From IMG/VR virus record IMGVR_UViG_3300020202_000061, positions 124,001-188,000 of that record: a stretch of 64,000 nucleotides of DNA. The stretch is one strand, 5' to 3'. This document shows positions 4,212 to 58,332 of the stretch, piece after piece (the stretch's first letter is position 1; each line of letters opens with the position of its first letter). The translations under genes were made by a program, and so were the position numbers. The notes beneath the pieces are model-generated. The model ran no database searches, was not told the DNA's origin, and was given only the letters and a program-made list of their open reading frames with translations.

Positions 4212-4240
4212 TTGACATTCTCAAGGGTTTGCCTTAAATA
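4212..4240 (+). promoter_or_regulatory. Hybrid promoter TTGACA-N17-TAAATA for tmRNA
   Basis: Exact spacing; same design at 54045-54073 (tRNA cluster) and 5628-5656. Confidence 0.7.
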
Positions 4241-4246
4241 GGTCTT

Positions 4247-4515: not shown

Positions 4516-4545
4516 AGAGAGCCGCCTTCGGGCGGCTCTCTTTTT
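4516..4545 (+). terminator. Intrinsic terminator of tmRNA
   Basis: AGAGAGCCGCC-TTCG-GGCGGCTCTCT followed by TTTT. Confidence 0.9.
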
Positions 4546-4561
4546 GTGTGGGATTACGGAA

Positions 4562-9336: not shown

Positions 9337-9426
9337 GGGCGTGTGGTGTAATGGCAGCACAGCGGTCTTATAAGCCGTTCGTTCCGGACTGGAGCATAGA
9401 GACGGGTTCGATTCCCTCCACGCCTA
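9337..9426 (+). tRNA. tRNA-Ile(UAU) with long variable arm
   Basis: Acceptor GGGCGTG/CACGCCT, A73; anticodon loop CTTATAA; V-arm GTTCCG-GAC-TGGAGC; T-loop TTCGATT with bulged T-stem; CCA not encoded (CCG). Confidence 0.8.
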
Positions 9427-9430
9427 CCGA

Positions 9431-9543: not shown

Positions 9544-9656
9544 GAAACCCCAGGGTTCGTCCCAGAGCCTGATCGTCTGTCCTAAATATTCCTGATCTTT
9601 TTACGTGGCTTAAGCCGCGCACGGGCCTTGTGCCCGATCAGGAGGAACTGACGGTT

Positions 9657-14366: not shown

Positions 14367-14379
14367 GGAATGAACAGAT

Positions 14380-17300
14380 ATGACTATCAATATTAATCAT
14401 CAGACCGAAACCATCACGTCGAACACGATCATCACATTTGGTGATTCGAACGCGATCATCCTACCCACGGGTAACACGGCGGCACAGCCCAGCACGGATG
14501 GTGCGATCCGCTACAACTCACAGACCTCCAAGTTGGAAGGTCGTGAAGGTGGTGTCTGGGGCAACCTGATCAGTGCTTCGTCTACACCGATTCTGATCCG
14601 GGATGCCGACGCGGATACGCGTGTTCGAGTGGAAGCCTCTGCTGACGAGGATATCATCCGATTCGACACCGGAGATACTCCGGCTGGATACGGTGCGGTC
14701 GCCAACATCATGACGCTCGCATCGAGCGGGTGGACCGTCGCCATGGGTACGGCAGATGTGGCCGCCACCAATGGTGCTCAGATCAGCCTGACAGCGGGTC
14801 ATGGAAACACTTCTGGTGGTGGTGGTTTCCTAATCCTTCAGGCTGGTGATGGCGGCTCAACTGGTTCTGGGGGTAGTGCGTCTCTTCAAGGAGGAACTGG
14901 TGGTGCGACATCTGGTGCAGGTGGTGATGTCACGGTTCGCGGTGGTAATTCGGCAGATGGCAATGGCGGGTCGGTTCAGGTTTCCGGTCGTAATGCAGCG
15001 GGAACAAATCGCACGGGCGGTAGTGTTTCGATTTTCGGTGGTAATGCTACTGGCACTGGTGCTGGTGGTAACGTAACGATTTCAGGCGGTGCCCTAGCGG
15101 GTGTTGGATCGGGTGGATTGATTTCTATTACCGGAGGTGTTGGTTCGGGATCGACCTCAGGTGGCTCGGTCACAATTACTGCGGGCTCGGGTGGAATTTC
15201 TGGTCTGGGCGCAACAACAATCGTTCAGGGCGGACCGGGTGGCACGACCTCGGGTGCAGGTGGTGTTCTGACTCTGCGTGGTGGTTCGGCCACGGATGGT
15301 AGTGGTGGTGCCGTCTCACTGATTGGACGCGATGGCACCGGCACAAACCGTGCGGGTGGTAACGCCAGCATTTCCGCTGGTAACGCTACGGGCACCGGAA
15401 ATGCCGGACAAGTCATTATCACGGGTGGTGCGCTGGCTGGTGCTGGCACACCCGGTGATGTCAACATCACTGGTGGTGCCGGACAAGGCGCAAATGTCGG
15501 TGGCAACGTAAACATCACAGGCGGTAATGGTGGTGCGACTGCCATTGGTGCGAACGTTGTTGTTGATGCCGGTCCTGGTGGTTCTACGACGGGTAGTGGC
15601 GGAACTCTATTCTTGCGTGGCGGCTCGGCCACGGATGGTAATGGTGGCTCGATCACCGTGCAGGGTCGTGATGGGACAGGCACGAACCGCGATGGTGGTA
15701 ATGTCACTATACAGGCTGGCAACTTCACTGGTTCGGGCGCTCGCGGCATCATCACTCTGACCGGTACTGATACGGCTGTGGTGTTGCCGGTCGGAACTGC
15801 GGGTGCGGAAGCTTCTCTCACCACAAACGGTATGCTCCGTTACGACAGCGGCACTGGAAAGTTTCGTGCCCGTCAGGCCGGAACCTGGGTGGACGTGATC
15901 AGTGCGGGTTCGACCCCGGCATTCATCGTGGACACCGATGGCGACACTCGTGTGCACACCGAGGCCAGTGCCGACGAGGATATCATCCGCTTCAACGTGG
16001 GTGATTCGCCTGTCGGATATGGTGCGGTCGCCAACATCATGACGCTCGCATCGAGCGGGTGGACCGTCGCCATGGGTACGGCTGATACGGCTGCGACTGC
16101 TGGTGCCCCTATCTCGATTACTGGTGGAACCGGAAACACGTCGGGAGCGGGTGGTAATACCTCACTACGTGCTGGTCAAGGTGGAGCGTCGGGAATTGGA
16201 GGAAGCCTTTTCCTAACTGGTGGTGCTGGTGGTGCTACCGGAGCCGGTGGTGAAATCATTGTTGAGGCCGGACCTGGGGGTACGACCAGCGGTAACGGTG
16301 GTGTTCTTACCTTGCGTGGAGGAAATCCCACCGATGGCAACGGTGGTGGCGTCACCATCTCCGGTCGTACCGGACAAGGCACCAATCGTGCGGGTGGTGG
16401 AATAACCCTTACCGGTGGAACCTCATCAGGTTCGGGTACTGCTGGTGCAATCAGTATCACTGCTGGTTTCGGTGGTACTGGTGCTGGTGGCACAGTCACG
16501 ATCACTGGTGGTACGGCTGGTACAGGAAACGTTGGTGGTGCGGTCACGATCAGTGGTGGCACTGGACAAGGTGCTGGTGCTGGTGGTGCAACCATCATTC
16601 AGGGTGGTGCAGCCGGAGCTACTGGTGCTGGTGGTTTGATCACCGTGCGTGGTGGAACCGCGACCGATGGTAATGGAGGTGGCGTTGTAGTTGAAGGACG
16701 CCCTGGGGTGGGTACCAACCGCAATGGCGGTCAGGTCAATATCACTGGAGGCAACCCGACCGGAACCGGAAATGCTGGAATCATCAGCATCGTTGGTGGC
16801 GCTCTTCAGGGTGTAGGTGCACCGGGAACCGTGTCGATCACGGGTGGTGCAGGCAATGGCTCCACGGGCGGTGGATCGGTCGATATCATTGGTGGTTCTG
16901 GAGGCACAACCGGCATTGGTGCAAATGTCACGATCACTGCTGGCCCTGGTGGTTCCACATCGGGTGCTGGTGGTATCGCATCACTTCGTGGTGGTCTGCC
17001 CGTGGATGGCAACGGTGGCGATGTACAGGTGCTTGGCCGTAACGCTGTTGGAACGAATCGCAATGGCGGCAACGTCACAATCACCTCAGGCAACGCTACG
17101 GGTACAGGCTCGGGCGGTGCGATCAGTATTACTGGCGGTGCGCTGGCTGGTGCTGGAATAGCGAATGACGTGTCGATCACAGGTGGTGCAGGTTCAGGTG
17201 CGACCACTGGGGGCGGAATTACGATTACGGCTGGCTCGGGTGGTTCGACCGGAGCCGGAGCAGATATCACCATTCAAGGTGGTCCGGGAGGCTCTACGTC

Positions 17301-25077: not shown

Positions 25078-26523
25078 GTGTCAAAGACCCAGGATATCGA
25101 CGAGAAAACCAAGAAAGAGCGGGAAAAGTTTACCGGGCTGGATTGGGCCTGCATTCCTAGCACCTTGGTACCGCTGCTCGAATATCTGCTCGGTGAACAG
25201 AAGCGGGATGGGAGTTGGAAGCCCGCAGCGAACGTGATGATTTGGGGCGCTCCTGGCATCGGCAAGACCGACATCGTTCGACAGACCGCTCGCTCCTGGG
25301 GCTATTCTACGGTGGCTCTCCATCTGCCCCAGTACGATCCCACTGACATCAAGGGTATCGCCGTCCGTATGGAGGATGGCTCGGTTCGGTGGATGAACAC
25401 CAGTTACCTGCCACAGCAGGTGGTGAAGCGGGTCATCGAGGATACCAAGTCGGTCGGTGTGGATTTCAAGGTGGTCAATCCGGACCGCGATCTGTGGGTG
25501 CGTCTGGTCGATGCCAAGGGGCGCACGGTCCACGCCTGGAACAACGACAAGCGATATCCCGGACTCCGTATGGATGGGGTCCAGATGACCATGACTGAGC
25601 GCACCACCGACGAACACGACCATTTCAAGCTGTTCACGGTGACCTCGAAGTCCTCTCTCAAAGGCTATCGGATCGAAGTGATCGAGAAGGTCATTCTGTT
25701 CCTGGATGAGTTGTCGGCGGCCGATCCGGGCACACAGAACGCTGCACTCCAACTTGTCTTGGATCGCCGTGTCAACGAGTATGACGTGCCCGAGGGTGTG
25801 CCCATCGTGGCCGCAGGCAATCGTGAGAGCGACGGCGCGTTTGTCCAGCAGATGAGCTTGCCCTTGGCGAACCGCTTCTGCCATATCAAGCTGATGCCCT
25901 CGGTGGACGATTTCGTCTCTTACGCGCTCAAGATTGGTTGCCATCCGGATATCGTCTCCCATCTGTATGACTCCGGTAGCAACTCCCTGCTCAAGGTGGA
26001 CGCTGACGCTCTGGCTGACGGCAACATGGGGTTCCCAAGCCCGCGCATCTGGATCAAGTTCTCTGAGCAGTATGACGATGCGCTCCCCGATGATATGATC
26101 AATCGGATGGCTGTGGGGTTCGTCGGCGTCCTGGAAGCGGCGAATTTCTCGATCTTCCGGAAAGTCAGCACGAAGCTGCCCAGCACCGAGGCGATCCTTC
26201 GGGGTCAGGACGTGTCCGACAAGATGCACGGCTTGGATCGGGTCGCTTACAACAACTTGGTCATGCGCTTGCTGTCCAAGCTCAAGGACTACCACACCAA
26301 TTACTACAAACCGGGTGTCCATGAGAATGATCAGGTCCAGGAGTGGCAGACCGCCGTCAACTCGGCGTTCACATTTATTCCGAAATTCCTCGGAGCCGAG
26401 ATCAGCGCATTCGTGGCGTTCCTCATTCCCGGCCTTATCCCGATGGAACATCTGCGCAGCGATGCGTTCGAGAAGTTCTGCAATAAGTACGTGGACATGT
26501 ATCAGAGGGTGAACCGGTTTTGA
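25078..26523 (+). CDS. MoxR-type AAA+ ATPase
   Basis: Walker A GAPGIGKT, Walker B ILFLDE, AAGNR sensor, LANRF arginine finger, SPR.W. Confidence 0.9.
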   Translation: MSKTQDIDEKTKKEREKFTGLDWACIPSTLVPLLEYLLGEQKRDGSWKPAANVMIWGAPGIGKTDIVRQTARSWGYSTVALHLPQYDPTDIKGIAVRMEDGSVRWMNTSYLPQQVVKRVIEDTKSVGVDFKVVNPDRDLWVRLVDAKGRTVHAWNNDKRYPGLRMDGVQMTMTERTTDEHDHFKLFTVTSKSSLKGYRIEVIEKVILFLDELSAADPGTQNAALQLVLDRRVNEYDVPEGVPIVAAGNRESDGAFVQQMSLPLANRFCHIKLMPSVDDFVSYALKIGCHPDIVSHLYDSGSNSLLKVDADALADGNMGFPSPRIWIKFSEQYDDALPDDMINRMAVGFVGVLEAANFSIFRKVSTKLPSTEAILRGQDVSDKMHGLDRVAYNNLVMRLLSKLKDYHTNYYKPGVHENDQVQEWQTAVNSAFTFIPKFLGAEISAFVAFLIPGLIPMEHLRSDAFEKFCNKYVDMYQRVNRF

Positions 26524-27980
26524 GCAATCCACTGAGTCCGAGCGAGCAAACGGTCATCGCCGATCAGGTTAAACAGGCGATGACCCTGCTCACCAAATGC
26601 CCATTGGGCAAGACGTTCAAGGACAACACCTACTATGATGAGGATGCTTATCAGAGGATGGTGGCGGCCAAGACCAGCCTGCTCTATCGTCATCCTCTGT
26701 TCGGGGTGTTGTCCATCGCACTGGTTCTGGTCGAGGATACGACCGGGATCATCGGCACGATGGCGACCGATGGGAAGCATATCTTCTACAGTGCGAAATT
26801 CGTCAATTCGCTGAGCGATGCAAGCTGCGAGTTTGCCGTTGCCCATGAAATCTACCACTGTATTTTCCGCCACTGTGGTCATGTCACGGAGTCGCGTGCC
26901 TTCGACAAGGATATGCGAATTTGGGGCTATGCCACGGACTATGTGATCAACGCGGACCTGAAAGAGGCGAACGTCGGTAAGTTCATCACCGAGATCAAAA
27001 TTCTCTATCGTGCCGAATATCTCGGATGGTCGAGCGAGGAGGTCTATGAGGACCTCAAGAAGAACCCGGAGAAGATGAATTCCAACCAGGGTGATAGTTC
27101 TGATAAGAACGGTACACCTCAGGCTGGTCAAGGTGGATCGGGTGATGCCCCGGATGGTCCCCACGACAAGCATATCCAGGTCGAGGTCATCCCGGACGAG
27201 GACGAGGGCAAGCAGCCCAAGGTCGAGCAGGATGGGTCTGAGATCAAGGTCAGGATGACCCAATCCGAATATGACAAGCTGCGTCAGTCCTGGAACGAGC
27301 AGCTACAGCAGGCGGCCGTGGCCCATCGTGAGGCTCAGCAAAGTCGTGGTGTGGGCTCGATCCCGGCCGGTATGGAGCGCATGCTCGATCACCTGCGTAC
27401 GCCACAGGTGAATTGGAAGGACGTGCTTCGTCGGTTTGTCCGACAGGTCAAACGCCGTGGCTACTCCTACATGAAGCTGAACAAGAACATGTTCCCGCTC
27501 GGCATCAGCATTCCCGGTTATCGCAGGATGATCAACGAACTGGATATTGTGGTCGGGATCGATGCCTCGGGTAGCGTCAGCGAGGAACAGCTTCGCGATT
27601 TTGCAACAGAGCTTCTCGGTATGCTCCAGGCATTCGACAGTTATCATGTCCTGGCCATGTGCTGGGAGTTCCTGGTTATGGAGGAGTCTGTCACCTGGAT
27701 CACACGCCAGAACATTGCGAAGAAACCCATGGATAGTCTGATCCCGTTCTTGAAGGTGATGGCGGGCGGTGGTGGGACTGATCCCAACTCGTGCTTCGAG
27801 TGGCTCAAGCGCAACAAGATGAAACCCAAGCTGCTCGTGATGTTCACGGATGGCGAAATTGGCTCGAACTGGGGCGATCCTAAATACTGTCCGACGCTGT
27901 GGATCATCCACAACTCGAACAAAAAGATCAAAGCCCCATTCGGACACACCGTGCATTATGAGCCAAAACAAACAGCCTAG
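26520..27980 (+). CDS. HExxH metallopeptidase-like + vWA domain protein (DUF2201-type MoxR partner)
   Basis: TMATDG, HEIYH, DYVIN; MIDAS DASGS, GGGT, FTDG. Confidence 0.85.
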   Translation: MSNPLSPSEQTVIADQVKQAMTLLTKCPLGKTFKDNTYYDEDAYQRMVAAKTSLLYRHPLFGVLSIALVLVEDTTGIIGTMATDGKHIFYSAKFVNSLSDASCEFAVAHEIYHCIFRHCGHVTESRAFDKDMRIWGYATDYVINADLKEANVGKFITEIKILYRAEYLGWSSEEVYEDLKKNPEKMNSNQGDSSDKNGTPQAGQGGSGDAPDGPHDKHIQVEVIPDEDEGKQPKVEQDGSEIKVRMTQSEYDKLRQSWNEQLQQAAVAHREAQQSRGVGSIPAGMERMLDHLRTPQVNWKDVLRRFVRQVKRRGYSYMKLNKNMFPLGISIPGYRRMINELDIVVGIDASGSVSEEQLRDFATELLGMLQAFDSYHVLAMCWEFLVMEESVTWITRQNIAKKPMDSLIPFLKVMAGGGGTDPNSCFEWLKRNKMKPKLLVMFTDGEIGSNWGDPKYCPTLWIIHNSNKKIKAPFGHTVHYEPKQTA

Positions 27981-45321: not shown

Positions 45322-45373
45322 CGCTTGCCTCAGAACCAAATCCCCACCATATTTGGGGTTGGAAAGAAGAATA

Positions 45374-46960
45374 ATGGGGAATGCAGGTACTTTTGTCGGA
45401 GCCAAACTCACAGAGGATTGCGCAGATCGCCTGATTGAGTGGATGACCCAGCAGGGTATCCCGAATCCGACTCCCAAAGAGGAGCTTCACTGTACGGTCG
45501 TCTACTCGGAAGAGCGTGAGATCAAGATCACACCGCTCGCCTATGAGCCGCCGCTGGAGATCGATCCGCGATTGTTCAAGTTCAAGCACTTCGGCGAGAA
45601 CCGCGAAGTTCTGGTCCTGGCATTCGACCGGCCTGAACTCGCTTACCGACATAAGCTGCTTCGCGAGAAGTATAAGCTGGGCTGGAAGTTTCCCAGCTAC
45701 ATCCCGCACGTCACTCTGAGTTACAACGCTCCGGAGCACATCGAGGTGTTGCCGGATTTTCCGCTGGTGTTCCAGGGAGAAGAGGTTGGTGGGTTCAATC
45801 CACCGGAGGAGTCTGCTGCGGCCGAGCATCTGGAGAAGAACGAACTCAGTGAGTATTACGAGATCGTCAACGATGAGCCCGTGCGCAAGAAGAAGCGCCC
45901 AGAACCGCCGAAGAAGTTGATCGCGCAGAATCTCATAAAGTTGGGCCTGAAAGAGGATCGTCATCATGAGGACCATCCTCGTGTGCAGGAGCCGGGTCCA
46001 CAACAACTCTCGTATACGAGTTCGATGCGACAGAACGCTGTGGGACAGAAGTGTCAGGTCATCGTGCAGATGCCGGTGCAGGACTTCCTCCGTCTGACCA
46101 CGACGAATGACGCGGATATCGAGACGGTCTTCCGCAAGCAGGCTCATCCGCTGGATTCCTACAATCACTGGAACCGCATGGGCGATGAGCGTGAATACGC
46201 GTCCCAGGTCAATCAGGGCAAGACCTCACAGGATAAAGATTATCAGTGGGGACGGATCGTCGGTCCGTTCTTGCGCATCGACATTGAGCCGCCAGCGGGC
46301 ACCTTCGGTAAGGTCTCCGGCCACGAAGGTCGTCATCGAGCAGCAGCCGTGTGGAACGCCGGAGGTAAAGTGATCCCGGTCGCGTTGTGTCTGCGTCCCT
46401 TCAAGGGAATGTTCCCGAAGAGCTATGGACCCGAATACGAGGCACATCGGGAGCACATCCCGATGGCCGTGCACGGCCAGTTTCGTTCGATCAGTGTGAG
46501 CACGAGGAATTGGAAGGTGATCGAACCAGACCTGCTCAAGCCGTATCGTCGCACGAACGAATCAGTGCTGATGGAGGTCGCAGGCTCGTTCTCGTGGTTT
46601 CATCCTAAGACCGAGCAAGAGGTCACTGCGGAATTCGGAAAGAACGAACACTGGGACCTCGTCAAGGCGAATCCGACGAGGTTTGGCATGACTCGTGCGG
46701 AAGTGAATCAGCCTAATGCGCGGATCGATGATGTCTTCAAACATGGCTGGGTTCGAGTCAACTATTACAGAGGTGTCTGGTACTTTCATGGACAAACCGC
46801 TGCATTGGTGCAGGCCGCAGCCAAGCACTACGCGTGGGCACATGAAGGACTACACGAGGTGATTCTGGATATCGTCGAACCCAACTACAAGTCCTACACC
46901 CTGATGGGTCCGGCCATCGAAAAGTTTCTCAAGCACGGAGTGCTGCCGGAGTGGCGCTAA
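45374..46960 (+). CDS. acb1: Acb1/T4 gp57B-like 2H phosphodiesterase fused to a ParB/Srx-like domain and the repeated unknown domain
   Basis: GTFVGAK...IPNPTPKEELHCTVVYS...LVL.FD..EL..RH...YIPHVTLSY aligns by eye with T4 57B; GHEGRHRAAA ParB-like motif. Confidence 0.8.
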   Translation: MGNAGTFVGAKLTEDCADRLIEWMTQQGIPNPTPKEELHCTVVYSEEREIKITPLAYEPPLEIDPRLFKFKHFGENREVLVLAFDRPELAYRHKLLREKYKLGWKFPSYIPHVTLSYNAPEHIEVLPDFPLVFQGEEVGGFNPPEESAAAEHLEKNELSEYYEIVNDEPVRKKKRPEPPKKLIAQNLIKLGLKEDRHHEDHPRVQEPGPQQLSYTSSMRQNAVGQKCQVIVQMPVQDFLRLTTTNDADIETVFRKQAHPLDSYNHWNRMGDEREYASQVNQGKTSQDKDYQWGRIVGPFLRIDIEPPAGTFGKVSGHEGRHRAAAVWNAGGKVIPVALCLRPFKGMFPKSYGPEYEAHREHIPMAVHGQFRSISVSTRNWKVIEPDLLKPYRRTNESVLMEVAGSFSWFHPKTEQEVTAEFGKNEHWDLVKANPTRFGMTRAEVNQPNARIDDVFKHGWVRVNYYRGVWYFHGQTAALVQAAAKHYAWAHEGLHEVILDIVEPNYKSYTLMGPAIEKFLKHGVLPEWR

Positions 46961-50533: not shown

Positions 50534-51070
50534 TTACTGATTGGGATACAGATTTTCCAATGATTTCTGTAGTTCTTCCAGTTGGAAGATCATTAGATCG
50601 GTCACATTCTGGAATGATGCCCAGAACAGCACATAATCGACCCAGAACCAGATCAGGCAGATGTAGGTCATGTAGTGGACCCATTGGTCGAAGCCGGTGA
50701 CGGTCCAGAACATCGCGGTAGTTTTGGGATCGAGCTTGTTCTTCTGACAGTGGTTCATCTTCCACCAATCACAATGATAGTGGATGAGGAACTCGAACAC
50801 GGCTGACCCTATCAATGCCCAGGCAACAAGACTTGGATATTGTTGGATTGGAGAGAGTCCGATCAGGACCAAATAGAAAAGGAACGATCCCAACACGTGC
50901 AGAGCGGAGTGAAGCAGACCTCCTGGATGTCCGTAGATGTGCTTGTTACGCCATTGATAAGGGGTCTGTGCGGGGAAGTCCAGAATGAAATGCTTGAGAC
51001 AGAGATACGCAAATCCTAGGATCGCAACCATATGGAAGCTGATCTGGTGTTCGATTAGGAAGTTCGACAT
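50534..51070 (-). CDS. DUF3307-like membrane protein
   Basis: KHFILDF..Q, HS..H, HYH.DW.K, G.DQW.H. Confidence 0.75.
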   Translation of the reverse strand: MSNFLIEHQISFHMVAILGFAYLCLKHFILDFPAQTPYQWRNKHIYGHPGGLLHSALHVLGSFLFYLVLIGLSPIQQYPSLVAWALIGSAVFEFLIHYHCDWWKMNHCQKNKLDPKTTAMFWTVTGFDQWVHYMTYICLIWFWVDYVLFWASFQNVTDLMIFQLEELQKSLENLYPNQ

Positions 51071-51077
51071 GGATCAC

Positions 51078-51368
51078 CTACTGGGGATCGACCGTGGCTG
51101 ACTGTGGTTCGTTGGTGTCGGTAGCAACCTCACCACGGCGTAATCTGCGTGTGGGCTCGGGACGTGGTGTGGTGGGCTGACGGGGATCGATCTTTTCCTG
51201 ATCGGTTTCGATCTCGACGATCAGTGCAGTATCCTCGTTGAACACGTCCTTCAGACTGGACTGGAAACTCTCACGCACATCGCTGGTGAGTGCGGTCGTG
51301 GTAGTGTCATCGCTGCGCACGATGCGGCTAAAGCGAACGGTCATGGTTTCGGTGACAAGCTTGGCCAT
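51078..51368 (-). CDS. Hypothetical protein
   Basis: ORF track; GGGG RBS. Confidence 0.55.
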   Translation of the reverse strand: MAKLVTETMTVRFSRIVRSDDTTTTALTSDVRESFQSSLKDVFNEDTALIVEIETDQEKIDPRQPTTPRPEPTRRLRRGEVATDTNEPQSATVDPQ

Positions 51369-51461
51369 AGAAATCCCCTGGTTTTACTCTTAAAGATTGG
51401 GCATCTTTGGAGTTTTTCAAGAAGTCTTGACGCGATCTGTGAGATTTGCTATATATTCGCC

Positions 51462-51830
51462 ACGACCGTGATGCCGGTGTGAGTCCGGTTCGCCCGAGGG
51501 CATCGCGCCCGGAGGCGGTAGCTCAAAAGGCCCATCTGCTACCACAGAGGGGCGAATAAACCCTGGTAGGGGAGAGCGCGGTCCCTTCTGCTGTTTGGTT
51601 CAGGTCATCGCGTTCACGTCGAAGCGGATACACCGGGCGAGCCTGCAATCCGTACGGGGCCTGCCAAGGGTCGCTAGACCAGTGGTGATCTGAACCAAGC
51701 AGCAATCGGCTAGTAGTCCTGGATCAGAATGCCAGGGCGAATACCGATACTCGTGTGGGTGCCCATCAATTCGTCACCTGAGGACGGAAGGCCGATGGGT
51801 AAACGGGAGCGTGTGTCAACGGCCCACACA
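51462..51830 (+). ncRNA. Unidentified ~370-nt structured RNA
   Basis: TTGACG-N17-TATATA promoter (51427-51455); no credible ORF; long helix TGCTGTTTGGTTCAGGTCATCGC / GTGGTGATCTGAACCAAGCAGCA and several other stems; ends approximate. Confidence 0.65.
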
Positions 51831-51884
51831 CCTTGATTCTCCAGGAATACGCACCATCTGATCCCCACGATTATGGGGGATTTC

Positions 51885-52247
51885 ATGCTGATTCGGATTC
51901 CAGAATTCAAGAACAAGGTCTATTGTCCGCTTCACGTCGTGAGCGTGTCCTGGTCCAAGACCGACCGTCATGGGTGGTGGGTAAATCACTGGTTTGTCAA
52001 TTTCTTTCGCCCCCTGATCGGACTCAAACCGAAGGAAAAGACTTGGATTCCAGATGAGTGGCACCAGTATCCGCCGACCGTCTATGTGAGGTATTCCTCG
52101 GAGGATCGGGACTACATAGAGTTCGAAATGGGACCCGATGGCGATGCCCAGGCCGAAGCCTGCTATCAGAGGATTATCTCCGAGGTCAACGAATTTTATC
52201 GCACGACTGGAATCAAAAAACCCCTTGACGGTTTGAGTTTGCTCTGA
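51885..52247 (+). CDS. Hypothetical protein
   Basis: GGGGG RBS before ATG 51885. Confidence 0.55.
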   Translation: MLIRIPEFKNKVYCPLHVVSVSWSKTDRHGWWVNHWFVNFFRPLIGLKPKEKTWIPDEWHQYPPTVYVRYSSEDRDYIEFEMGPDGDAQAEACYQRIISEVNEFYRTTGIKKPLDGLSLL

Positions 52248-52259
52248 TATAAGCCCGCC

Positions 52260-52396
52260 TCCCGACATGTCGGGAATGGTGATGAACGCACGTAGTAATC
52301 GTGTCGGAGGCCCCTAGGGGTCCGCCCTGAATGCCCTCGGTTCATAGCCTTGGGACTAAACTGGGAGTCGGGGTTACGGCCGACACATCGCTACCA
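52260..52396 (+). ncRNA. Unidentified ~140-nt structured RNA
   Basis: TTGACG-N17-TATAAG promoter (52225-52253); stems TCCCGAC/GTCGGGA, TGGTGATG/CATCGCTA, GTGTCGG/CCGACAC, GCCCTGA/TCGGGGT. Confidence 0.55.
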
Positions 52397-52469
52397 AGTT
52401 ATCCACAAGAAATTCTAAAATCGGTCACAAATCCCTTGGCCTTTTTTAGCGAACCGCATATATAGGGAT

Positions 52470-53281
52470 CGGCAGCGTGATGCCGTCAGCACAACCGGGG
52501 TGACCCGGCCAAAGCGGAGAAGGTCCCCACCAACCCCGCGCCTCGCAAGAGGAGCACTCACGCGACAACCCAGGTCTGCCCCAAAAGGGTGCATCGTGAG
52601 AGCGGTGCGAAACAGGACAAGGTGAGGTAGTCAAGCGGCCCTCAAAAGGGGTCGTCAGGTAGAGGTCGCACTCTACCGCTTCCTGCGAAACACCACCTGT
52701 GAGGACTCAAGGGAAGGGGTCGGGTTGACCGTTAGCGCGGGAAGGCTCGATTCCAGTCTGATGGGAGAGGTTCGGCTGTTCAAGGCTCGCCAGAAATGGA
52801 GGGTCACGTAGCCGGGCTAAGCTTCCAGAAAGACCGTTAGTAGGCCCGCAAGGTCGAAAGCAAAGCACGGGTGTATTCTGGCCGGGCAACCGGTTGGATC
52901 ACAGTCAGTGGCTCGTGTTTGGTGGTTCCGGTAGGCAATGGCTTTTGAACGGCCAATCCTATTGATGGAAACGGAAAAGGAAAGACCGCTGACAGCGTGG
53001 GCTGAAAGAGGCCAACGTCCCTCAGGGACACCACCGGGACCCCAAGTCCAGGTGGCATCTAGGGAAAGGGTCTATCGGGATTTTCGCGAGTCCAGGTAGG
53101 TTCAGGAACTGGAGAAGATGCCTACGTTAAGCGCAAATGCCAGCGCTCTATAAATGGGCGGCCTTGCTTGGCTACCAACGAAAGTTGGTGGATGAGGTTC
53201 GAAACCCGGTGTGCTTACCCATCGGGGAATAATGGATCGAAGGCCGAGTATGCCTCACCTTAGTCTAGGGTGGGGCTTTTT
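52470..53281 (+). ncRNA. GOLLD-like giant structured RNA (~810 nt)
   Basis: Size, phage/tRNA context, purine-rich with many GNRA and CAAAAG-capped hairpins; TAGTAGGCCCGCAAGGTCGAAAG and CTACCAAC-GAAA-GTTGGTGGAT..GGGGAATAAT elements resemble GOLLD as I recall it; terminal hairpin plus U-tract. Confidence 0.6.
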
Positions 53282-53319
53282 CTTTTGCAGAACTCTGAAA
53301 ATTCTGATATATCCTGGGG

Positions 53320-54048
53320 ATGTCCGACGAGAATCCCTTCGAGCACCTATCTGACTCGGAATTGATGGACCGTCTTGGTGTGTCCTGGAATTCCGTGCTG
53401 AACCTGCGTGCGCAGATCAAGAAGGCCAAGGAAGCTCTTCCGGCCGCGTCCGAGGAATTGGAACAGCTTGAACGGGAGGCGAGCAAGCGCAAACGCCGCG
53501 ATGAATGGCTGGCGAAGCAGCCCGAGTTCGAACGAGCCCGTCAGGACCCGGAGTGGCAGGCGTGGCGCGTGGCATTCCTAGCGCGGGCTCGGGCGGCCGA
53601 AATCAACACACTGAACCTTCCAACGCCGGGTTTGAATTTCGTCCATGAGGACGTGTCTCTGACAGACCTCAACCTGTTCATGGCTCCGATCCATCCCGAG
53701 GAAGAGTTCGTTCGGTTCGACAATTCCTGGACCATGGCCCAGGTTGTGGTGCACGTCGGTCTATTCCAGAGCCTGACTCAGGCCAGAAAGAACGGTTTCA
53801 ACAAGCCGATTCCCAGTGGTTTCTCCCAGCATGTGATGGGGAAGAAGAAAACCACGGTGTTCATTCTGAACCGCTTACCCAAAGAGCCTAAGCCCACGCG
53901 TAGCATGTCTTGGGTCTACCAGGGTGTCAGCTATACCTACGGAAATGGCTTTTACACCTGCACCTATCCCGATGGTATTTGGTCGGTCTCGTTCAATGGA
54001 GTGCATTTCGTAAATGGAAAAGTTGTGCGTTCGAAAAGAAACTCTTGA
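53320..54048 (+). CDS. Hypothetical protein with possible S4-like RNA-binding motif
   Basis: Coiled-coil N-terminus; MAQVVVHVGLFQSLTQARKNG resembles the S4 motif. Confidence 0.55.
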   Translation: MSDENPFEHLSDSELMDRLGVSWNSVLNLRAQIKKAKEALPAASEELEQLEREASKRKRRDEWLAKQPEFERARQDPEWQAWRVAFLARARAAEINTLNLPTPGLNFVHEDVSLTDLNLFMAPIHPEEEFVRFDNSWTMAQVVVHVGLFQSLTQARKNGFNKPIPSGFSQHVMGKKKTTVFILNRLPKEPKPTRSMSWVYQGVSYTYGNGFYTCTYPDGIWSVSFNGVHFVNGKVVRSKRNS

Positions 54049-54094
54049 CACACCCTGGGGTTTCGACTAAATACGTCCTGATCGCGAGATCAAC

Positions 54095-54207
54095 CCGATC
54101 ATAAGTTAACAAGCCGAGGGTTCGCTGTCCCATGACGATGGGAATGCACCTTAGCTAGACGACCAGCTTTTAACTGGTTAGTATGGGTCCGAGTCCCATT
54201 GGTCGGT
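54095..54207 (+). tRNA. tRNA-Lys(UUU)-like RNA with a ~40-nt hairpin inserted in the D-loop
   Basis: Acceptor CCGATCA/TGGTCGG; ACCAG-CTTTTAA-CTGGT; T-arm ATGGG-TCCGAGT-CCCAT; no CCA. Confidence 0.6.
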
Positions 54208-54210
54208 TAC

Positions 54211-54286
54211 GCCCCTGTAGCTCAGTGAATAGAGCGGCCGGTTTCTACCCGGTAGGTCGGGAGTTTGAATCTCTCCAGGGGTGCCA
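54211..54286 (+). tRNA. tRNA-Arg(UCU)
   Basis: GCCCCTG/CAGGGGT acceptor, loop TTTCTAC, encoded CCA. Confidence 0.9.
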
Positions 54287-54287
54287 A

Positions 54288-54364
54288 CCAGCGGTAGCTC
54301 AGAGACAGTAGAGCGCCGGAGTTAAATCTGGAGGTCGGGGGTTCAATTCCTTCCCGCTGGGCCA
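54288..54364 (+). tRNA. Atypical tRNA with 6-nt anticodon loop (GTTAAA); possibly Asn-derived
   Basis: CCAGCGG/CCGCTGG, G73, CCA; stem CCGGA/TCTGG closes only 6 nt. Confidence 0.65.
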
Positions 54365-54385
54365 TTTTGTAGAGGAAACACGACT

Positions 54386-54424
54386 ATGTTGTTGCGTGAA
54401 GAGGAATCGATGAAGGCTGTGTAA
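54386..54424 (+). CDS. Leader peptide MLLREEESMKAV (GAA-GAG-GAA) of the tRNA-Glu operon
   Basis: AGAGGA RBS 9 nt upstream; 3' end overlaps the antiterminator strand. Confidence 0.7.
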   Translation: MLLREEESMKAV

Positions 54425-54482
54425 TGTGACCAACATTGTTGGTGCACACGCAGCCGCCTGGAGAAATCCCGGCGGCTTTTTT
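54415..54482 (+). promoter_or_regulatory. Transcription attenuator: antiterminator 54415-54455 versus terminator 54452-54482
   Basis: GGCTGTGT pairs with ACGCAGCC around the GTG-ACCAAC/GTTGGT-G-CAC hairpin; terminator AGCCGCC-TGGA-GAAA-TCCC-GGCGGCT-TTTTT shares AGCC. Confidence 0.75.
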
Positions 54483-54490
54483 GTTGCTCT

Positions 54491-54567
54491 GTCCCTGTCG
54501 TCTAGCGGTCAAGGATGCCACCCTCTCAAGGTGGAGATCACGGGTTCGAATCCCGTCAGGGACGCCA
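54491..54567 (+). tRNA. tRNA-Glu(CUC)
   Basis: GTCCCTG/CAGGGAC, CCACC-CTCTCAA-GGTGG, TTCGAAT, CCA. Confidence 0.95.
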
Positions 54568-54581
54568 AGAATACGAACGAT

Positions 54582-54657
54582 GGCTCGTTCATCTAGTGGC
54601 CTAGGATACCGGACTTTCACTCCGGGTACACGGGTTCGACTCCCGTACGAGCTACCA
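54582..54657 (+). tRNA. tRNA-Glu(UUC)
   Basis: GGCTCGT/ACGAGCT, CCGGA-CTTTCAC-TCCGG, TTCGACT, CCA. Confidence 0.92.
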
Positions 54658-54659
54658 GA

Positions 54660-54734
54660 CGCCCATTCGTCTACTGCCTAGGACACTGGCCTTTCAAGCC
54701 AGGGGAAGGGGATGGATACCCCTATGGGCGACCA
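54660..54734 (+). tRNA. tRNA-Glu(UUC) with non-canonical T-loop
   Basis: CGCCCAT/ATGGGCG, CTGGC-CTTTCAA-GCCAG, T-loop ATGGATA, CCA. Confidence 0.85.
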
Positions 54735-54760
54735 GTTTCAGTTCCCGAACGGTAGTAGGG

Positions 54761-54837
54761 TGCTGGGGTGAAGCGGGGTTCGAGTCCCCAAGCGGATCGG
54801 TTCGACTCCGACTCGCGCAGGTGCAATATCCCCAGCG
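54761..54837 (+). ncRNA. tRNA-like element with two T-loop hairpins
   Basis: GCTGGGG/CCCCAGC closing stem; GGGG-TTCGAGT-CCCC and TCGG-TTCGACT-CCGA. Confidence 0.5.
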
Positions 54838-54841
54838 TTTT

Positions 54842-54922
54842 CCCCCGTGGGATTGCGGTTGGTGTGATCGCCGGTTTCTCAAATCGGAGCACAGATGGGT
54901 TCGACGCCCATACGGGGGACCA
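54842..54922 (+). tRNA. tRNA-Glu(CUC), divergent
   Basis: CCCCCGT/ACGGGGG, D-stem GATT/GATC, CCGGT-TTCTCAA-ATCGG, ATGGG-TTCGACG-CCCAT, CCA. Confidence 0.8.
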
Positions 54923-54965
54923 AAACTCCTAGACAAGATCGGGAAATCCTGGTATTACCGATCTC

Positions 54966-55319
54966 ATGCCGGTTCTCAAACATAAAATTCCCTGCAACCA
55001 GTGTCCGTTCCGACGCAAATCCGCGCCGGGCTATTTGGGTGCGGACACGCCGGAGCATTTCATTCAAACCACCCTGGCCGAGGCTCACATGCCCTGTCAT
55101 TGCGCCATCGACTACGAGCGCAAGGATTGGAAAACCCGACAGTATCCCAAGGCTGCTTTGTGCGCCGGGGCACTGACGTTCTTGAAAAACACCTGCAAAC
55201 TCCCACGTGATGAAGTGCTGCGTGAGGCCATGAAGGAAATTCCGGCAAATCATGCCGAGGTATTCTCGTTCGCTCCGCAGTTTCTGGAACACCACAACTC
55301 CCTGAAAGGACGCCGCTGA
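54966..55319 (+). CDS. Cys-rich hypothetical protein
   Basis: PCNQCPFR...CH...CAG. Confidence 0.65.
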   Translation: MPVLKHKIPCNQCPFRRKSAPGYLGADTPEHFIQTTLAEAHMPCHCAIDYERKDWKTRQYPKAALCAGALTFLKNTCKLPRDEVLREAMKEIPANHAEVFSFAPQFLEHHNSLKGRR

Positions 55320-56608: not shown

Positions 56609-57820
56609 ATGGCGAAGTTTGAAGTGCCCGTGGTTCGCGTTCGTGCGGTCGAGAAGCATCCGAACGCTGATCGACTCGATATCGTCCGTATCGGCGACTA
56701 CAACTGCATCAGCAACAAGAAAGAGGACGGCACGTCCAGGTATGCGCCGGGCGATCTCGTCGTCTACGTCCCGGAGGGTGCCATCGTTCCAGAGTGGTTG
56801 CTCCGCATGGGCTTCTGGAATGAAAAGACCAACATGGGTCTGCTCGCCGGACCTCAGGGCAATCGCGTGAAGGCGGTGACCCTGCGTGGGGTCATCAGCC
56901 AGGGCATTATGTTTCCGGTCAGCACTGGTGACGTGCAGGGCTTTCCCCTGGGTGATCCCAACATGAACGCGCCCTGGATCAGCGTTGAAGAGGGTCAGAA
57001 CCTCGCGACCGATCTCAACATCATCAAGTATGAGCCGGAGATTCCCGATTGCCTCAAAGGTTCGGTTGCGTCCTGCCACGGATGGACTCTCAAGGGCGAT
57101 CTGGAGAACGTCAAGAAGTTCCCCGACATCCTCCAAGAGGGTGAGGAAGTCGTGATGACCGAGAAGGTTCACGGCGTCTACATGCAGATCGGTTATGTAC
57201 CGAATTTGGAGTTCGAGATCGATGCCGACGAGAGCAATGGGCTCTACAAGGATGGCGATTGGTTCGTCACGTCCAAGGGTCTGGCCGAGGTCGGCATGGT
57301 ATTTCAGTTGAACGAGGAGAACGCTGAGAACCTCTACGTGAAGATGTTTCGCAAGATGAAGGAACGTCTGGAGTGGCTCTACAACGACATGTACGAGAAG
57401 TGGCAACAGACTCAGGATCGTTACTACCCGGAGAATCGCCCGTTCTACCTGATCGGTGAACTTTACGGGCCGGGCGTCCAGGACCTCCACTACAGTTTCC
57501 AGCAGGAGTTCGTCGCCCACGACATCTACATGGGTCAGCCCGGCAACGGTTGGTATCTGGATGAGGATCAGTTCGCCTATCATACCGAAAGGGCTCACAT
57601 CGACCGTGCGCCGGTCCTCTATAAGGGTCCGTTCTCGAAGGGGGTGATGCTCCAGCACACGAGTGGGCCAAGCGTCTTGGCTCTCGGAAAGCACATTCGT
57701 GAGGGACTGGTGGTGAAGCCCATGCAGAACCGCCGAGACGACCGGATCGGTCGCGTCATGCTGAAATCGGTCAGCGACGAATACTTGCTCCGTAAGGGAG
57801 ACGCTACGGAGTACGCATGA
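56609..57820 (+). CDS. RNA ligase, DRB0094/Rnl2-like family with N-terminal OB domain
   Basis: HPNADRL, YVPEG, LRG.ISQG, motif I EKVHG, GELYGPGVQ, REGLVVK, LKSVSDEYL. Confidence 0.9.
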   Translation: MAKFEVPVVRVRAVEKHPNADRLDIVRIGDYNCISNKKEDGTSRYAPGDLVVYVPEGAIVPEWLLRMGFWNEKTNMGLLAGPQGNRVKAVTLRGVISQGIMFPVSTGDVQGFPLGDPNMNAPWISVEEGQNLATDLNIIKYEPEIPDCLKGSVASCHGWTLKGDLENVKKFPDILQEGEEVVMTEKVHGVYMQIGYVPNLEFEIDADESNGLYKDGDWFVTSKGLAEVGMVFQLNEENAENLYVKMFRKMKERLEWLYNDMYEKWQQTQDRYYPENRPFYLIGELYGPGVQDLHYSFQQEFVAHDIYMGQPGNGWYLDEDQFAYHTERAHIDRAPVLYKGPFSKGVMLQHTSGPSVLALGKHIREGLVVKPMQNRRDDRIGRVMLKSVSDEYLLRKGDATEYA

Positions 57821-58332
57821 CGAACTGGGGCAAGATTTACCACCGGAAGGCTCGATTCACTAGGGATGAGGTTTATGGACGGTTTGGCTGTCCTCCGGCG
57901 AATCGTTCGAAGATCGTCGTCGATCTGCATGGTGAATGCACGTCAGTAAATCAACTTCGCCTGCGGGTGTTCTGGAACACCGGGTTTAGGTGTGTGGCGT
58001 GTTCAGCCGAACTGACCCATTTCTTCCAGGAGGCCCATGCCAACGACCCCAAGGTGAAATATCTGTTGGAGTTTCCTCCTGCCGGGGGTGGAAGTGGGAT
58101 TAAGTTTCATCTGAACGCTTATGGTCTGAACGAGTATGGTCATGAGGTCATGATGACCATCGACCATATTAAACCCCGGTGTCATGGCGGTAATAATCGC
58201 CTACACAACCTCACCACTCTTTGTTCGACCTGCAATGGAAAGAAGGGCGCAGACTTGAATTGGCTCAAAGACCTCCCACGTAATTCCCAGGGGTTTTTGG
58301 TGCCTCGCCCACATTTGCAGAATATTGAGTGA
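57817..58332 (+). CDS. HNH-motif protein
   Basis: CVAC; MTIDHIKP...GG.N...N...LC..CN..KG. Confidence 0.8.
   Translation: MTNWGKIYHRKARFTRDEVYGRFGCPPANRSKIVVDLHGECTSVNQLRLRVFWNTGFRCVACSAELTHFFQEAHANDPKVKYLLEFPPAGGGSGIKFHLNAYGLNEYGHEVMMTIDHIKPRCHGGNNRLHNLTTLCSTCNGKKGADLNWLKDLPRNSQGFLVPRPHLQNIE

What the first reader, a model, noticed from the sequence alone, without database searches (positions are those of the whole stretch)
52436..53281. GOLLD-like giant RNA next to the tRNA cluster
Seen: ~810 nt without a credible ORF, own promoter (TATATA at 52459) and terminal hairpin, many GNRA and CAAAAG-capped stems. Established: GOLLD RNAs are ~800 nt, phage-associated, often near tRNAs and of unknown function. 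The family call is from recalled motifs only; if it fails, this is a new large RNA class. Its neighbours suggest a role in translation defence.
Basis: partly seen in the sequence, partly recalled or inferred. Interest (0 to 1): 0.7.

Follow-up and report, generated by a model that had tools for sequence, protein, structure and literature searches.

The report
Divergent GOLLD RNA in huge phage
The stretch encodes an ~810-nt non-coding RNA that is a divergent member of the known phage GOLLD family of cage-forming RNAs, in a 347-kb soil phage, and it appears as a discrete transcript in environmental RNA libraries from several studies.

Summary
Window 52466-53286 (+) has no credible ORF. It is bounded by a promoter-like site (TTGGCC-N16-TATATA, 52437-52464) and an intrinsic terminator (53252-53286), and it is enriched in GNRA- and CAAAA-capped hairpins.

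Evidence for GOLLD membership:
- The Rfam GOLLD model (3' domain only) aligns end to end to 52862-53271 at E 1e-19. The score is 76.7 bits, about half the curated cut-off of 150, so routine annotation misses it.
- 90 of 95 mapped consensus pairs are standard pairs.
- A model I built from the 5'-domain ends of five published GOLLDs, without this sequence, hits the 64-kb window once, at 52710-52863.

Evidence for function:
- Related phages in soil, water and wastewater keep the RNA at about 90-94% identity, against 81-83% for most laid stretches of the flanking ORFs.
- They carry five compensatory pair changes.
- In four metatranscriptome studies, contigs lie only on 52489-53246.

The host genome is a 347.5-kb phage with 54 tRNA genes and a tmRNA gene. 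A tRNA cluster starts 930 nt downstream. It most likely acts as other GOLLDs do, as a self-assembling RNA cage; its biological role is unknown. The "translation defence" idea has no support. This is a new, unusually divergent member of a known family.

The parts
52222..52252 (+). Upstream promoter-like site P1 (TTGACG-N17-TATAAG with a TG extension). It is a possible alternative start that would add a ~210-nt leader.
   Evidence: It is the best local match to the phage's recurrent TTGACR-N16-17-TATATA type. The leader 52256-52468 shows no unusual folding (z -0.47). In one relative (X13) 52254-52396 is replaced by unlike sequence.
52437..52464 (+). Promoter-like site P2 (TTGGCC-N16-TATATA) directly before the first conserved hairpin of the RNA.
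   Evidence: Read from the sequence. It has the same -10 type as the phage's other sites. The generic scan does not call it. Conservation in relatives starts at 52396-52458.
52466..52861 (+). GOLLD 5' domain (~396 nt). Elements: hairpin 52470-52486 (loop GCGUGA); GUGA hairpin 52495-52508 followed by CCAAAG; GCAA hairpin 52541-52552; CAAAA-capped hairpins 52577-52591 and 52635-52655; UUAGCG hairpin 52729-52740; GAAA hairpin 52790-52799; CGCAA hairpin 52843-52855 followed by GAAAG.
   Evidence: Model R1, built from five published GOLLD 5'-domain ends without the window, has its only match in the window at 52710-52863 (23.6 bits, E ~1e-5). Model R2's only hit is 52466-52593 (11.8 bits, E 0.21). 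The UUAGCG hairpin pairs in all six aligned sequences, and three of its pairs change on both sides. Compensatory changes in relatives lie at 52596/52603, 52639/52651, 52791/52798 and 52792/52797.
52862..53271 (+). GOLLD 3' domain (Rfam RF02032, model positions 1-416). It comprises the P14-like hairpin 52862-52921 (GCAA loop), linker 52922-52993, long-range helix 52994-53003/53119-53128, hairpins 53017-53029, 53031-53055 (loop CCCAA) and 53058-53113, GAAA-tetraloop hairpin 53173-53190, and helix 53196-53201/53233-53238 with an inserted hairpin 53205-53227.
   Evidence: The cmscan match is full length, 76.7 bits, E 9.7e-20. 90 of 95 mapped pairs are standard pairs. All 7 listed substitutions in these helices keep pairing.
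52922..52993 (+). Variable linker (72 nt) with a hairpin at 52939-52955. It holds no tRNA, unlike the linkers of phiCbK, Mesorhizobium, Erythrobacter and Phaeobacter phage GOLLDs.
   Evidence: No tRNA match even in a permissive scan of 52905-53005. There is a compensatory change at 52941/52953. The other phages have a tRNA embedded here.
53072..53099 (+). Single hairpin where the family consensus has two inner hairpins (the P21 region). Its loop holds the palindrome UCGCGA (53084-53089), a candidate self-kissing contact.
   Evidence: Realigned pairs 53072-53076/53095-53099 and 53077-53079/53091-53093 are all standard pairs. The palindrome is read from the sequence. No substitution is listed there in relatives. 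Equating it with the published L21a kissing loop is an inference from PMC12286853.
53252..53286 (+). Last GOLLD hairpin (loop region UUAGUCUAG against the family's GUAAUCUCAG), extended to an 11-bp stem and followed by a T run. It doubles as the intrinsic terminator.
   Evidence: Terminator scan and alignment to the end of the Rfam model. RNA-run contigs end at 53242-53246.
54211..54922 (+). Downstream tRNA cluster (Arg-UCU, a tRNA with an odd anticodon loop, four tRNA-Glu). It is the first of the phage's tRNA-rich half.
   Evidence: ARAGORN and Rfam.

Best explanation
Window ~52466-53286 (+) is the gene for a GOLLD RNA: a bipartite, highly structured non-coding RNA of about 810 nt, carried by a 347.5-kb phage with 54 tRNA genes and a tmRNA gene. 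Shown here: it is homologous to GOLLD in both domains, it is under stronger purifying selection than most of the neighbouring ORF sequence laid, its stems are kept by compensatory changes, and it accumulates as a discrete RNA in environmental samples. Inferred: it is transcribed from its own sigma-70-like promoter (P2, or P1 followed by trimming) and ends at the last GOLLD hairpin, which doubles as a terminator. Also inferred, by analogy with the solved env-38 and Streptococcus agalactiae GOLLD structures: it folds into a 5' 'cap' domain and a 3' 'ring' domain and assembles with copies of itself into a closed RNA-only cage (I put this at about 0.5-0.6). Elements that could serve as contacts are the GAAA tetraloop at 53180-53183, the palindromic loop UCGCGA at 53084-53089, GNRA and CAAAA loops as A-minor donors, and a paired change in the linker flank and the CCCAA loop. 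What the cage does is unknown for the whole family. My best guess (about 0.3) is that it serves the phage's own translation module of tRNAs and tmRNA during lytic growth. Because this member has no tRNA in its linker, holding an embedded tRNA cannot be its role here.
For: Rfam GOLLD matches full length at E 9.7e-20, on the plus strand only. 90 of 95 consensus pairs are standard pairs. Model R1, built only from published GOLLD 5' ends, has its only match in the window (E<=10) at 52710-52863, abutting the 3' domain. It matches mycobacteriophage PegLeg in the same relative position with a similar score. Model R2's only hit is at 52466-52593. Relatives in DNA runs keep the RNA at about 90-94% identity, against 81-83% for most laid stretches of the flanking ORFs, in the same gene order. 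Among the listed substitutions there are 5 compensatory double changes, 13 one-sided changes that keep the pair, and one inserted C...G pair. In RNA runs from four studies, contigs lie only on 52489-53246 and end there. The flanks have zero depth, including in run X3, whose contig differs from the window at 2 positions. 24 RNA or RNA-like runs from at least 12 studies hold part of it. Published GOLLDs include Caulobacter phiCbK-like, Mesorhizobium, Roseobacter and Erythrobacter phages, all in tRNA clusters. The cage structures are described in PMC12286853 and PMC12990946.
Against: The score is 76.7 bits, about half of Rfam's gathering score; six published GOLLDs score 150.7-216 and a seventh (Erythrobacter phage) 141.9, also below the cut-off. 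The genome search with the same family misses it. Several family motifs differ: the first 3'-domain loop is GCAA rather than UCAAAAG; one hairpin is cut to 5 bp; one of the two P21 inner hairpins is absent; and CGCAA has become CCCAA. R2 alone is not significant (E 0.21), and its start point was set by my own alignment. The middle of the 5' domain rests on energy-based folds, where 5 listed substitutions break predicted pairs. Contigs carry no strand information, and the substitution lists were truncated by the tool. Neither RNA end is mapped. Oligomerisation and function were not tested here.
Confidence: 0.87

Rival explanations
1. The RNA is not an independent gene. It is the structured 5' part of a longer transcript: a leader of the 242-aa ORF at 53320-54048, or part of a precursor that starts at P1 (52222-52252) and runs into the tRNA cluster, from which the GOLLD piece is cut out.
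For: P1 fits the phage's promoter type better than P2. One published suggestion is that GOLLD and ROOL sit near tRNAs because they may be co-transcribed with them (PMC5737381). The RNA contigs start at 52489 or later and end at 53242-53246, so neither end is mapped.
Against: A strong terminator follows the last GOLLD hairpin, and a separate promoter-like site (TGATATATC, ~53300-53312) precedes the next ORF. No RNA contig covers 52258-52488 or 53292-54230. The leader 52256-52468 shows no unusual fold, and its 52254-52396 part is replaced by unlike sequence in one relative.
Confidence: 0.12
2. It is a new class of large structured RNA that only resembles GOLLD by chance or by convergence.
For: The score is below Rfam's cut-off. 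blastn and nhmmer find no similarity to seven published GOLLD loci. Several conserved loops differ.
Against: E 9.7e-20 for a full-length alignment of 416 model positions. An independent 5'-domain model has its only match in the window at the right place, order and strand. The two share hairpins with covarying stems and the same loop and flank motifs: UUAGCG, CGCAA followed by GAAAG, and a GNRA loop followed by CAAAG. The genomic setting is the same.
Confidence: 0.02
3. It is a decaying, non-functional GOLLD remnant.
For: It is the lowest-scoring GOLLD seen here, with truncated or missing peripheral hairpins and no embedded tRNA.
Against: It is better conserved than most of the neighbouring ORF sequence laid, across soil, groundwater, wastewater and biofilter relatives. 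Changes in stems are compensatory or keep the pair. It is found as RNA in many studies. Solved GOLLDs such as the S. agalactiae one also lack peripheral helices and still assemble (PMC12990946).
Confidence: 0.04
4. The region encodes small proteins.
For: There are minus-strand ORFs of 60-73 aa.
Against: Relatives carry 1-nt indels in each of them. The 73-aa ORF has no homologue among 5.8 billion protein clusters. The substitution pattern follows stems, not codons.
Confidence: 0.01

Closest known systems
GOLLD RNA (Rfam RF02032; Weinberg et al. 2009; cryo-EM structures of env-38 and S. agalactiae GOLLD, PMC12286853 and PMC12990946)
   Same: Length is about 800 nt, with a less conserved 5' domain, a variable linker and a conserved 3' domain. 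Every 3'-domain helix of the Rfam consensus can form. The GAAA tetraloop hairpin, the AUAAU and GAAAG motifs and the terminal hairpin loop are kept. It is phage-encoded and lies next to tRNA genes.
   Different: It scores 76.7 bits, against 142-216 for seven published phage GOLLDs. The loop of the first 3'-domain hairpin is GCAA, not UCAAAAG. One hairpin is reduced to 5 bp with a 3-nt loop. There is one inner hairpin instead of two in the P21 region. A ~23-nt hairpin is inserted in a late loop. The last hairpin is lengthened into a terminator.
GOLLDs of alphaproteobacterial phages (Caulobacter phiCbK-like, Mesorhizobium Cp1R7A-A1, Erythrobacter vB_EliS-L02, Roseobacter DSS3P8, Phaeobacter MD18), listed in the supplementary alignment of PMC12286853
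   Same: The 5'-domain elements can be aligned. G+C content is high. They sit in large phages with tRNA clusters and a two-piece alpha-type tmRNA gene, which this phage also has at 4216-4552.
   Different: Four of the five have a tRNA inside the linker; this one has none. In phiCbK, DSS3P8 and MD18 the tmRNA gene lies within 0.2-0.8 kb of GOLLD; here it is 48 kb away. There is no detectable primary-sequence similarity. The host genome is larger (347 kb, 54 tRNAs).
ROOL RNA (Rfam RF03087)
   Same: It is also a large, ornate, phage-associated RNA found near tRNAs that forms RNA-only cages.
   Different: Sequence and fold are unrelated. No match to ROOL at E <= 10 in 52100-53500.

Membership tests
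GOLLD (RF02032) | Score at or above Rfam's curated gathering cut-off (150 bits) | tested here: not met
   76.7 bits; not listed in gathering mode. This is an operational cut-off for automatic annotation, not a definition. The Erythrobacter phage GOLLD included in the published alignment also falls below it at 141.9 bits.
GOLLD (RF02032) | Statistically significant, full-length match of sequence and structure to the conserved 3' domain | tested here: met
   Model positions 1-416 align to 52862-53271 (+) at E 9.7e-20.
GOLLD (RF02032) | The consensus 3'-domain helices can all form | tested here: met
   90 of 95 mapped pairs are standard pairs. All 7 listed substitutions in these helices keep pairing in relatives. 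One hairpin is shortened and one inner hairpin is absent, as also happens in solved members.
GOLLD (RF02032) | A 5' domain homologous to that of other GOLLDs | tested here: met
   For its 3'-terminal ~150 nt: model R1, built without the window, has its only match in the window at 52710-52863 (E ~1e-5). It also finds mycobacteriophage PegLeg just before its 3' domain. For the first ~125 nt the test is inconclusive: R2's only hit is in the right place but at E 0.21. The middle (~52594-52709) was not tested.
GOLLD (RF02032) | Conserved loop and junction motifs of the 3' domain | tested here: inconclusive
   Kept: GAAA tetraloop hairpin followed by GUGGAU, AUAAU, GAAAG, and the terminal loop core UAGUCU. 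Changed: UCAAAAG to GCAA, CGCAA to CCCAA, GAGUAG to GAAGAUG.
GOLLD (RF02032) | Encoded by a phage or prophage, usually beside tRNA genes | tested here: met
   The record is a 347.5-kb virus record with 54 tRNA genes. The nearest cluster starts 930 nt downstream.
GOLLD (RF02032) | Expressed as a stable RNA (rising during phage lysis in Lactobacillus brevis) | tested here: met
   Presence as a discrete RNA is met: contigs in four metatranscriptome studies are confined to 52489-53246, and 24 RNA or RNA-like runs hold part of it. Timing during infection is not testable with these tools.
GOLLD (RF02032) | Self-assembly into an RNA-only cage (10-, 12- or 14-mer) | not testable with these tools
   Only candidate contact elements can be named: the palindrome UCGCGA at 53084-53089, the GAAA tetraloop at 53180-53183, and a paired change G52980/C53042. 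Needs mass photometry or cryo-EM.
ROOL (RF03087) | Match to the ROOL covariance model | tested here: not met
   No ROOL match at E <= 10 in 52100-53500.

The most novel reading that the evidence does not exclude
This lineage may be a distinct GOLLD subclass. It is tRNA-free, has a single palindromic P21 loop, a GNRA loop in place of the A-rich loop, and a swapped base pair in the linker-flank/loop contact. These differences could make it assemble into a cage of different stoichiometry. It could work within the near-complete translation toolkit of huge phages (54 tRNAs, tmRNA), for example by enclosing ribosomal or tRNA cargo. The 16S-helix-43-like element 0.7 kb upstream would then be part of the same ribosome-directed module.
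Probability: 0.12. Interest if true: 0.7.

Novelty: new member of a known kind. Interest (0 to 1): 0.38.

Why it matters
GOLLD is one of the largest bacterial or phage non-coding RNAs. It has solved cage structures but no known function. This member adds three things:
- It shows that standard Rfam thresholds miss divergent GOLLDs in huge environmental phages.
- It provides a high-G+C homologue, very distant in sequence, with natural variants. These help to test which helices and inter-chain contacts are truly required. One example is a possible compensatory swap in the L20-J13/15 kissing contact.
- It shows that a GOLLD accumulates as a discrete RNA in soil, rhizosphere and sediment metatranscriptomes, and parts of it are also held by wastewater RNA libraries. 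This argues that the RNA is made in quantity in nature.

Because this member lacks an embedded tRNA, it also argues against tRNA storage as the general role of the family.

Tried and rejected
Searches for relatives that found nothing useful:
- Motif patterns found only chance matches or the window's own contig. This covered IMG/VR, JGI metagenome contigs and GTDB genomes.
- blastn against INPHARED phages found nothing.
- The neighbouring 242-aa ORF has no relatives in IMG/VR.
- The 1796-aa protein gave only partial matches, which I did not examine further. Five large contigs reached that way hold no GOLLD.

Other steps that led nowhere:
- Using the spurious 73-aa ORF as a handle to fetch related contigs failed.
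- The genome search with RF02032 missed the window's own copy, so it was not used to judge absence.
- Terminase Pfam families gave no match in the phage.
- There is no second copy of the RNA in the phage.
- blastn and nhmmer see no similarity to published GOLLDs in either domain; only structure-aware models do.

Ideas rejected:
- The linker is not a tRNA, although its hairpin has a 7-nt anticodon-like loop.
- Rfam finds nothing in 51000-52480, and the leader 52256-52468 is not unusually structured.
- There is no sign that TAG, TGA or TAA is recoded, so table 11 was kept.

Not run: complex prediction, because it gives no verdict for RNA.

Full report
WHAT IS THERE

The window is part of a 347.5-kb IMG/VR virus record, about 90% complete. 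The record has 54.5% G+C, 54 tRNA genes and a two-piece tmRNA gene. Between the stop of an upstream ORF (52247) and the start of a 242-aa ORF (53320) lie 1072 nt with no ORF longer than 73 aa.

- TATATA lies at 52459-52464, 16 nt after TTGGCC.
- An 11-bp hairpin with a T run lies at 53252-53286. It is the only terminator-like site in 51800-55200.
- There are six GNRA-capped hairpins and two CAAAA-capped hairpins. Dinucleotide shuffles give 2.0 and 0.12 respectively.
- The plus strand folds better than shuffles (z -3.2); the minus strand does not.

FAMILY TEST, 3' DOMAIN

At Rfam's gathering thresholds nothing is reported here. With E-value reporting, the GOLLD model RF02032 aligns over all 416 positions to 52862-53271 (+). 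That model covers only the conserved 3' domain. The score is 76.7 bits and E is 9.7e-20; ROOL does not appear.

I mapped each consensus helix onto window coordinates. 90 of 95 pairs are standard pairs.

Kept motifs:
- the GAAA-tetraloop hairpin followed by GUGGAU (53173-53195)
- AUAAU
- GAAAG after the long-range helix
- the core of the terminal loop

Differences from the consensus:
- The first hairpin ends in GCAA, not UCAAAAG.
- One hairpin is cut to 5 bp.
- The P21 region has one inner hairpin instead of two.
- CGCAA has become CCCAA.
- A ~23-nt hairpin is inserted in a late loop.

For scale, six published phage GOLLDs score 150.7-216 bits, and a seventh (Erythrobacter phage) scores 141.9, also below the cut-off. 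This one is by far the most divergent.

FAMILY TEST, 5' DOMAIN

Rfam has no model for the 5' domain. The supplementary GOLLD alignment of Kretsch et al. (PMC12286853) lists Caulobacter phiCbK-like, Mesorhizobium, Roseobacter, Phaeobacter, Erythrobacter, Vibrio and Mycobacterium phages. I fetched seven of these loci.

blastn and nhmmer see nothing in common with the window in either domain. A MAFFT alignment of the ~400-460 nt upstream of each 3' domain does show shared elements in the same order:
- a first hairpin with a GYRUGA-like loop
- a GNRA hairpin followed by CAAAG
- a hairpin with loop UNNGCG whose stem covaries (three pairs change on both sides; all six sequences pair)
- a final CGCAA hairpin followed by GAAAG

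As an independent test I built a covariance model from the last ~120 nt of the 5' domain of five published GOLLDs, leaving the window out. Its only match (E<=10) in the 64-kb window, on both strands, is 52710-52863 (+) at 23.6 bits and E about 1e-5, directly abutting the Rfam match. The same model finds mycobacteriophage PegLeg just before its 3' domain at 31.5 bits, so the element is a general GOLLD feature.

A second model, for the first ~125 nt, also gives a single hit, at 52466-52593. It scores only 11.8 bits (E 0.21), and its start was fixed by my alignment. I count it as suggestive only.

CONSERVATION AND COVARIATION

Thirty-one-letter words of the stretch occur in many public runs from soil, rhizosphere, freshwater, groundwater, drinking water, wastewater and sediment.

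In DNA runs, related phages keep the same gene order.

| Run | RNA region identity | Flanking ORF identity |
|---|---|---|
| X13 | about 90% | about 82% |
| X9 | 92-93% | 81-83% |
| X4 | 94-96% for most of it (about 88% for 53151-53286) | 82-88% |

- A few short flank pieces are higher: 89% and 97% in X9, and about 90% in X13.
- Some flank segments were too diverged to be laid at 80%.
- In X13, 52254-52396 is replaced by unlike sequence.
- Conservation resumes at 52396-52458, just at the promoter-like site.

The tool lists only the best-supported differences. Among the 43 listed substitutions in the RNA:
- 13 fall in unpaired positions.
- 13 are one-sided and keep the pair. All 7 that lie in Rfam-derived helices are of this kind.
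- 5 pairs changed on both sides and stayed paired: 52596/52603, 52639/52651, 52791/52798, 52792/52797, 52941/52953.
- One variant has a C inserted after 52614 and a G after 52698, on opposite strands of a predicted helix.
- 5 break pairs, and all of those pairs were predicted only by energy minimisation.

Single-base indels in relatives break all three of the longest ORFs.

TRANSCRIPTION

I laid Logan contigs from four metatranscriptome studies on 51600-54400.

| Run | Source | Contig(s) on the RNA | Differences from the window |
|---|---|---|---|
| X3 | soil | one 551-nt contig, 52696-53246 | 2 |
| X11 | rhizosphere | one 669-nt contig, 52489-53158 | 40 plus 9 gaps |
| X21 | soil | one 722-nt contig, 52523-53242 | 43 plus 4 gaps |
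| X24 | sediment | several pieces, 52587-53242 | 1-13 per piece |

- The X3, X11 and X21 contigs fit from their first to their last letter, so they do not run on into unlike sequence.
- Apart from a 16S-like 36-mer at 51709-51744 and a tRNA at 54308-54344, the rest of the laid stretch has zero depth. This includes the ORFs on both sides.
- In DNA runs the same flanks are covered.

The RNA therefore accumulates as a discrete molecule far above the neighbouring mRNAs.

Contigs carry no strand information. The plus strand is assigned from the covariance-model matches, the terminator and the folding. Contig ends about 20-35 nt inside the predicted ends are what short-read assembly usually gives, but a processed 3' end near 53245 is not excluded.

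PROMOTER

The generic scan finds no sigma-70 site. The phage does hold about ten sites of the type TTGACR-N16-17-(TG.)TATATA, nearly all on the plus strand. One lies directly before tRNA(CUA).
- P2 (52437-52464) has this -10 element but a weak -35.
- P1 (52222-52252) is a better match and lies 210 nt upstream.
- The stretch between them is not unusually structured.
- Another site of the same type follows the terminator, before the next ORF.

I favour P2, because the first conserved GOLLD hairpin starts at 52470. This is an inference.

HOW IT PROBABLY WORKS

Cryo-EM shows that GOLLDs assemble without protein into closed cages of 10-14 chains. The 3' domains form rings and the 5' domains form caps. 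The chains are held by kissing loops, tetraloop contacts and A-minor contacts, and the variable linker faces the interior. The function is unknown (PMC12286853, PMC12990946).

The window's RNA keeps elements that could serve as such contacts:
- the GAAA tetraloop
- a palindromic loop (UCGCGA, 53084-53089) in the region where the published L21a loop forms a symmetric kiss through a GC or CG dinucleotide
- GNRA and CAAAA loops that can donate adenosines

One detail is suggestive. Five of the seven published sequences checked, all from alphaproteobacterial phages, have ...GCAAAG... in the linker flank, and six have CGCAA in the loop I take to be L20. The window has GGAAAG and CCCAA: a C-to-G change in one and a G-to-C change in the other. 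This is what a base pair in the published L20-J13/15 inter-chain kiss would require. I did not verify which nucleotides pair in the structure, so this is a lead, not a result.

The linker here holds no tRNA. Four of the five alphaproteobacterial phage GOLLDs embed one. Enclosing its own tRNA therefore cannot be the function of this member.

The neighbours give no functional clue, and "translation defence" remains a guess.

VERDICT

This is a real, expressed, selectively maintained GOLLD RNA. It is a new and unusually divergent member of a known family, in a huge soil phage that probably infects an alphaproteobacterium (inferred from its alpha-type tmRNA). Identity: about 0.87. Cage assembly: about 0.5-0.6. 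Biological role: unknown.

Noticed in passing
window 51702-51750 (+): About 45 nt closely resemble bacterial 16S rRNA around helix 43 (from my recollection of the E. coli 16S sequence, ~1338-1380). The hairpin stem is changed in a pair-keeping way (CCUGG...CCAGG). Very deep rRNA contigs from RNA runs lie on 51709-51744 with 4 differences. It sits ~250 nt downstream of a strong promoter-like site (51427-51455) and before the 124-aa ORF. Rfam has no match. It could be a ribosomal-protein or tRNA-contact mimic, or chance.
   Followed up: partly
whole phage; in the window 51427-51455, 52222-52252, 52437-52464, ~53283-53312: A recurrent promoter-like type, TTGACR-N16-17-(TG.)TATATA, occurs about ten times in the 347-kb genome, nearly all on the plus strand. 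One copy lies directly upstream of tRNA(CUA) at genome 218699.
   Followed up: partly
window 45353-46960 (+): A 535-aa protein has an N-terminal Acb1 domain (anti-CBASS 2H phosphoesterase; Pfam PF23474, E 2.6e-22; PHROGs calls it 'RNA ligase'). The C-terminal ~390 aa are unassigned.
   Followed up: no
window 4216-4552 (+); loci L208, L211, L212, L214: The phage encodes a two-piece alpha-type tmRNA (tag ANDNFVADEGFRMAA). In phiCbK, DSS3P8, MD18 and mycobacteriophage PegLeg a tmRNA gene lies within about 0.2-0.8 kb of GOLLD. This recurrent GOLLD-tmRNA-tRNA neighbourhood is not kept here, where the two are 48 kb apart.
   Followed up: partly
window 54288-54364 (+) and 9337-9428 (+); genome 218699-218776 and 64636-64709: Unusual tRNAs. 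One has a 6-nt anticodon loop GUUAAA (ARAGORN 'Stop|Leu'). A 92-nt tRNA-Ile(UAU) has a long extra arm. There is a tRNA(CUA) suppressor and a second tRNA with an odd loop. There are also four tRNA-Glu in a row at 54491-54922. Stop-to-stop ORF statistics give no sign of stop-codon recoding.
   Followed up: partly
window 57817-58332 (+) and 26520-27980 (+): HNH endonuclease genes lie near the tRNA cluster. GOLLD, tRNA arrays and an HNH endonuclease also travel together in mycobacterial tRNA arrays (PMC6582537) and in phage PegLeg (L214).
   Followed up: no
window 9630-19770 (+): Two adjacent giant ORFs (1578 and 1796 aa). The second has no match in isolated phages. It gave only partial matches to many IMG/VR contigs, and the peptide seeds drawn from it recur (DEDIIRFN/DEDIIRFD).
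   Followed up: no
window 52862-53271: Tool behaviour: the genome search with family RF02032 reports no match in the window's own genome (3 candidates scored). cmscan in E-value mode finds the full-length match at E 1e-19. Absence calls from that route are not reliable for divergent GOLLDs.
   Followed up: yes
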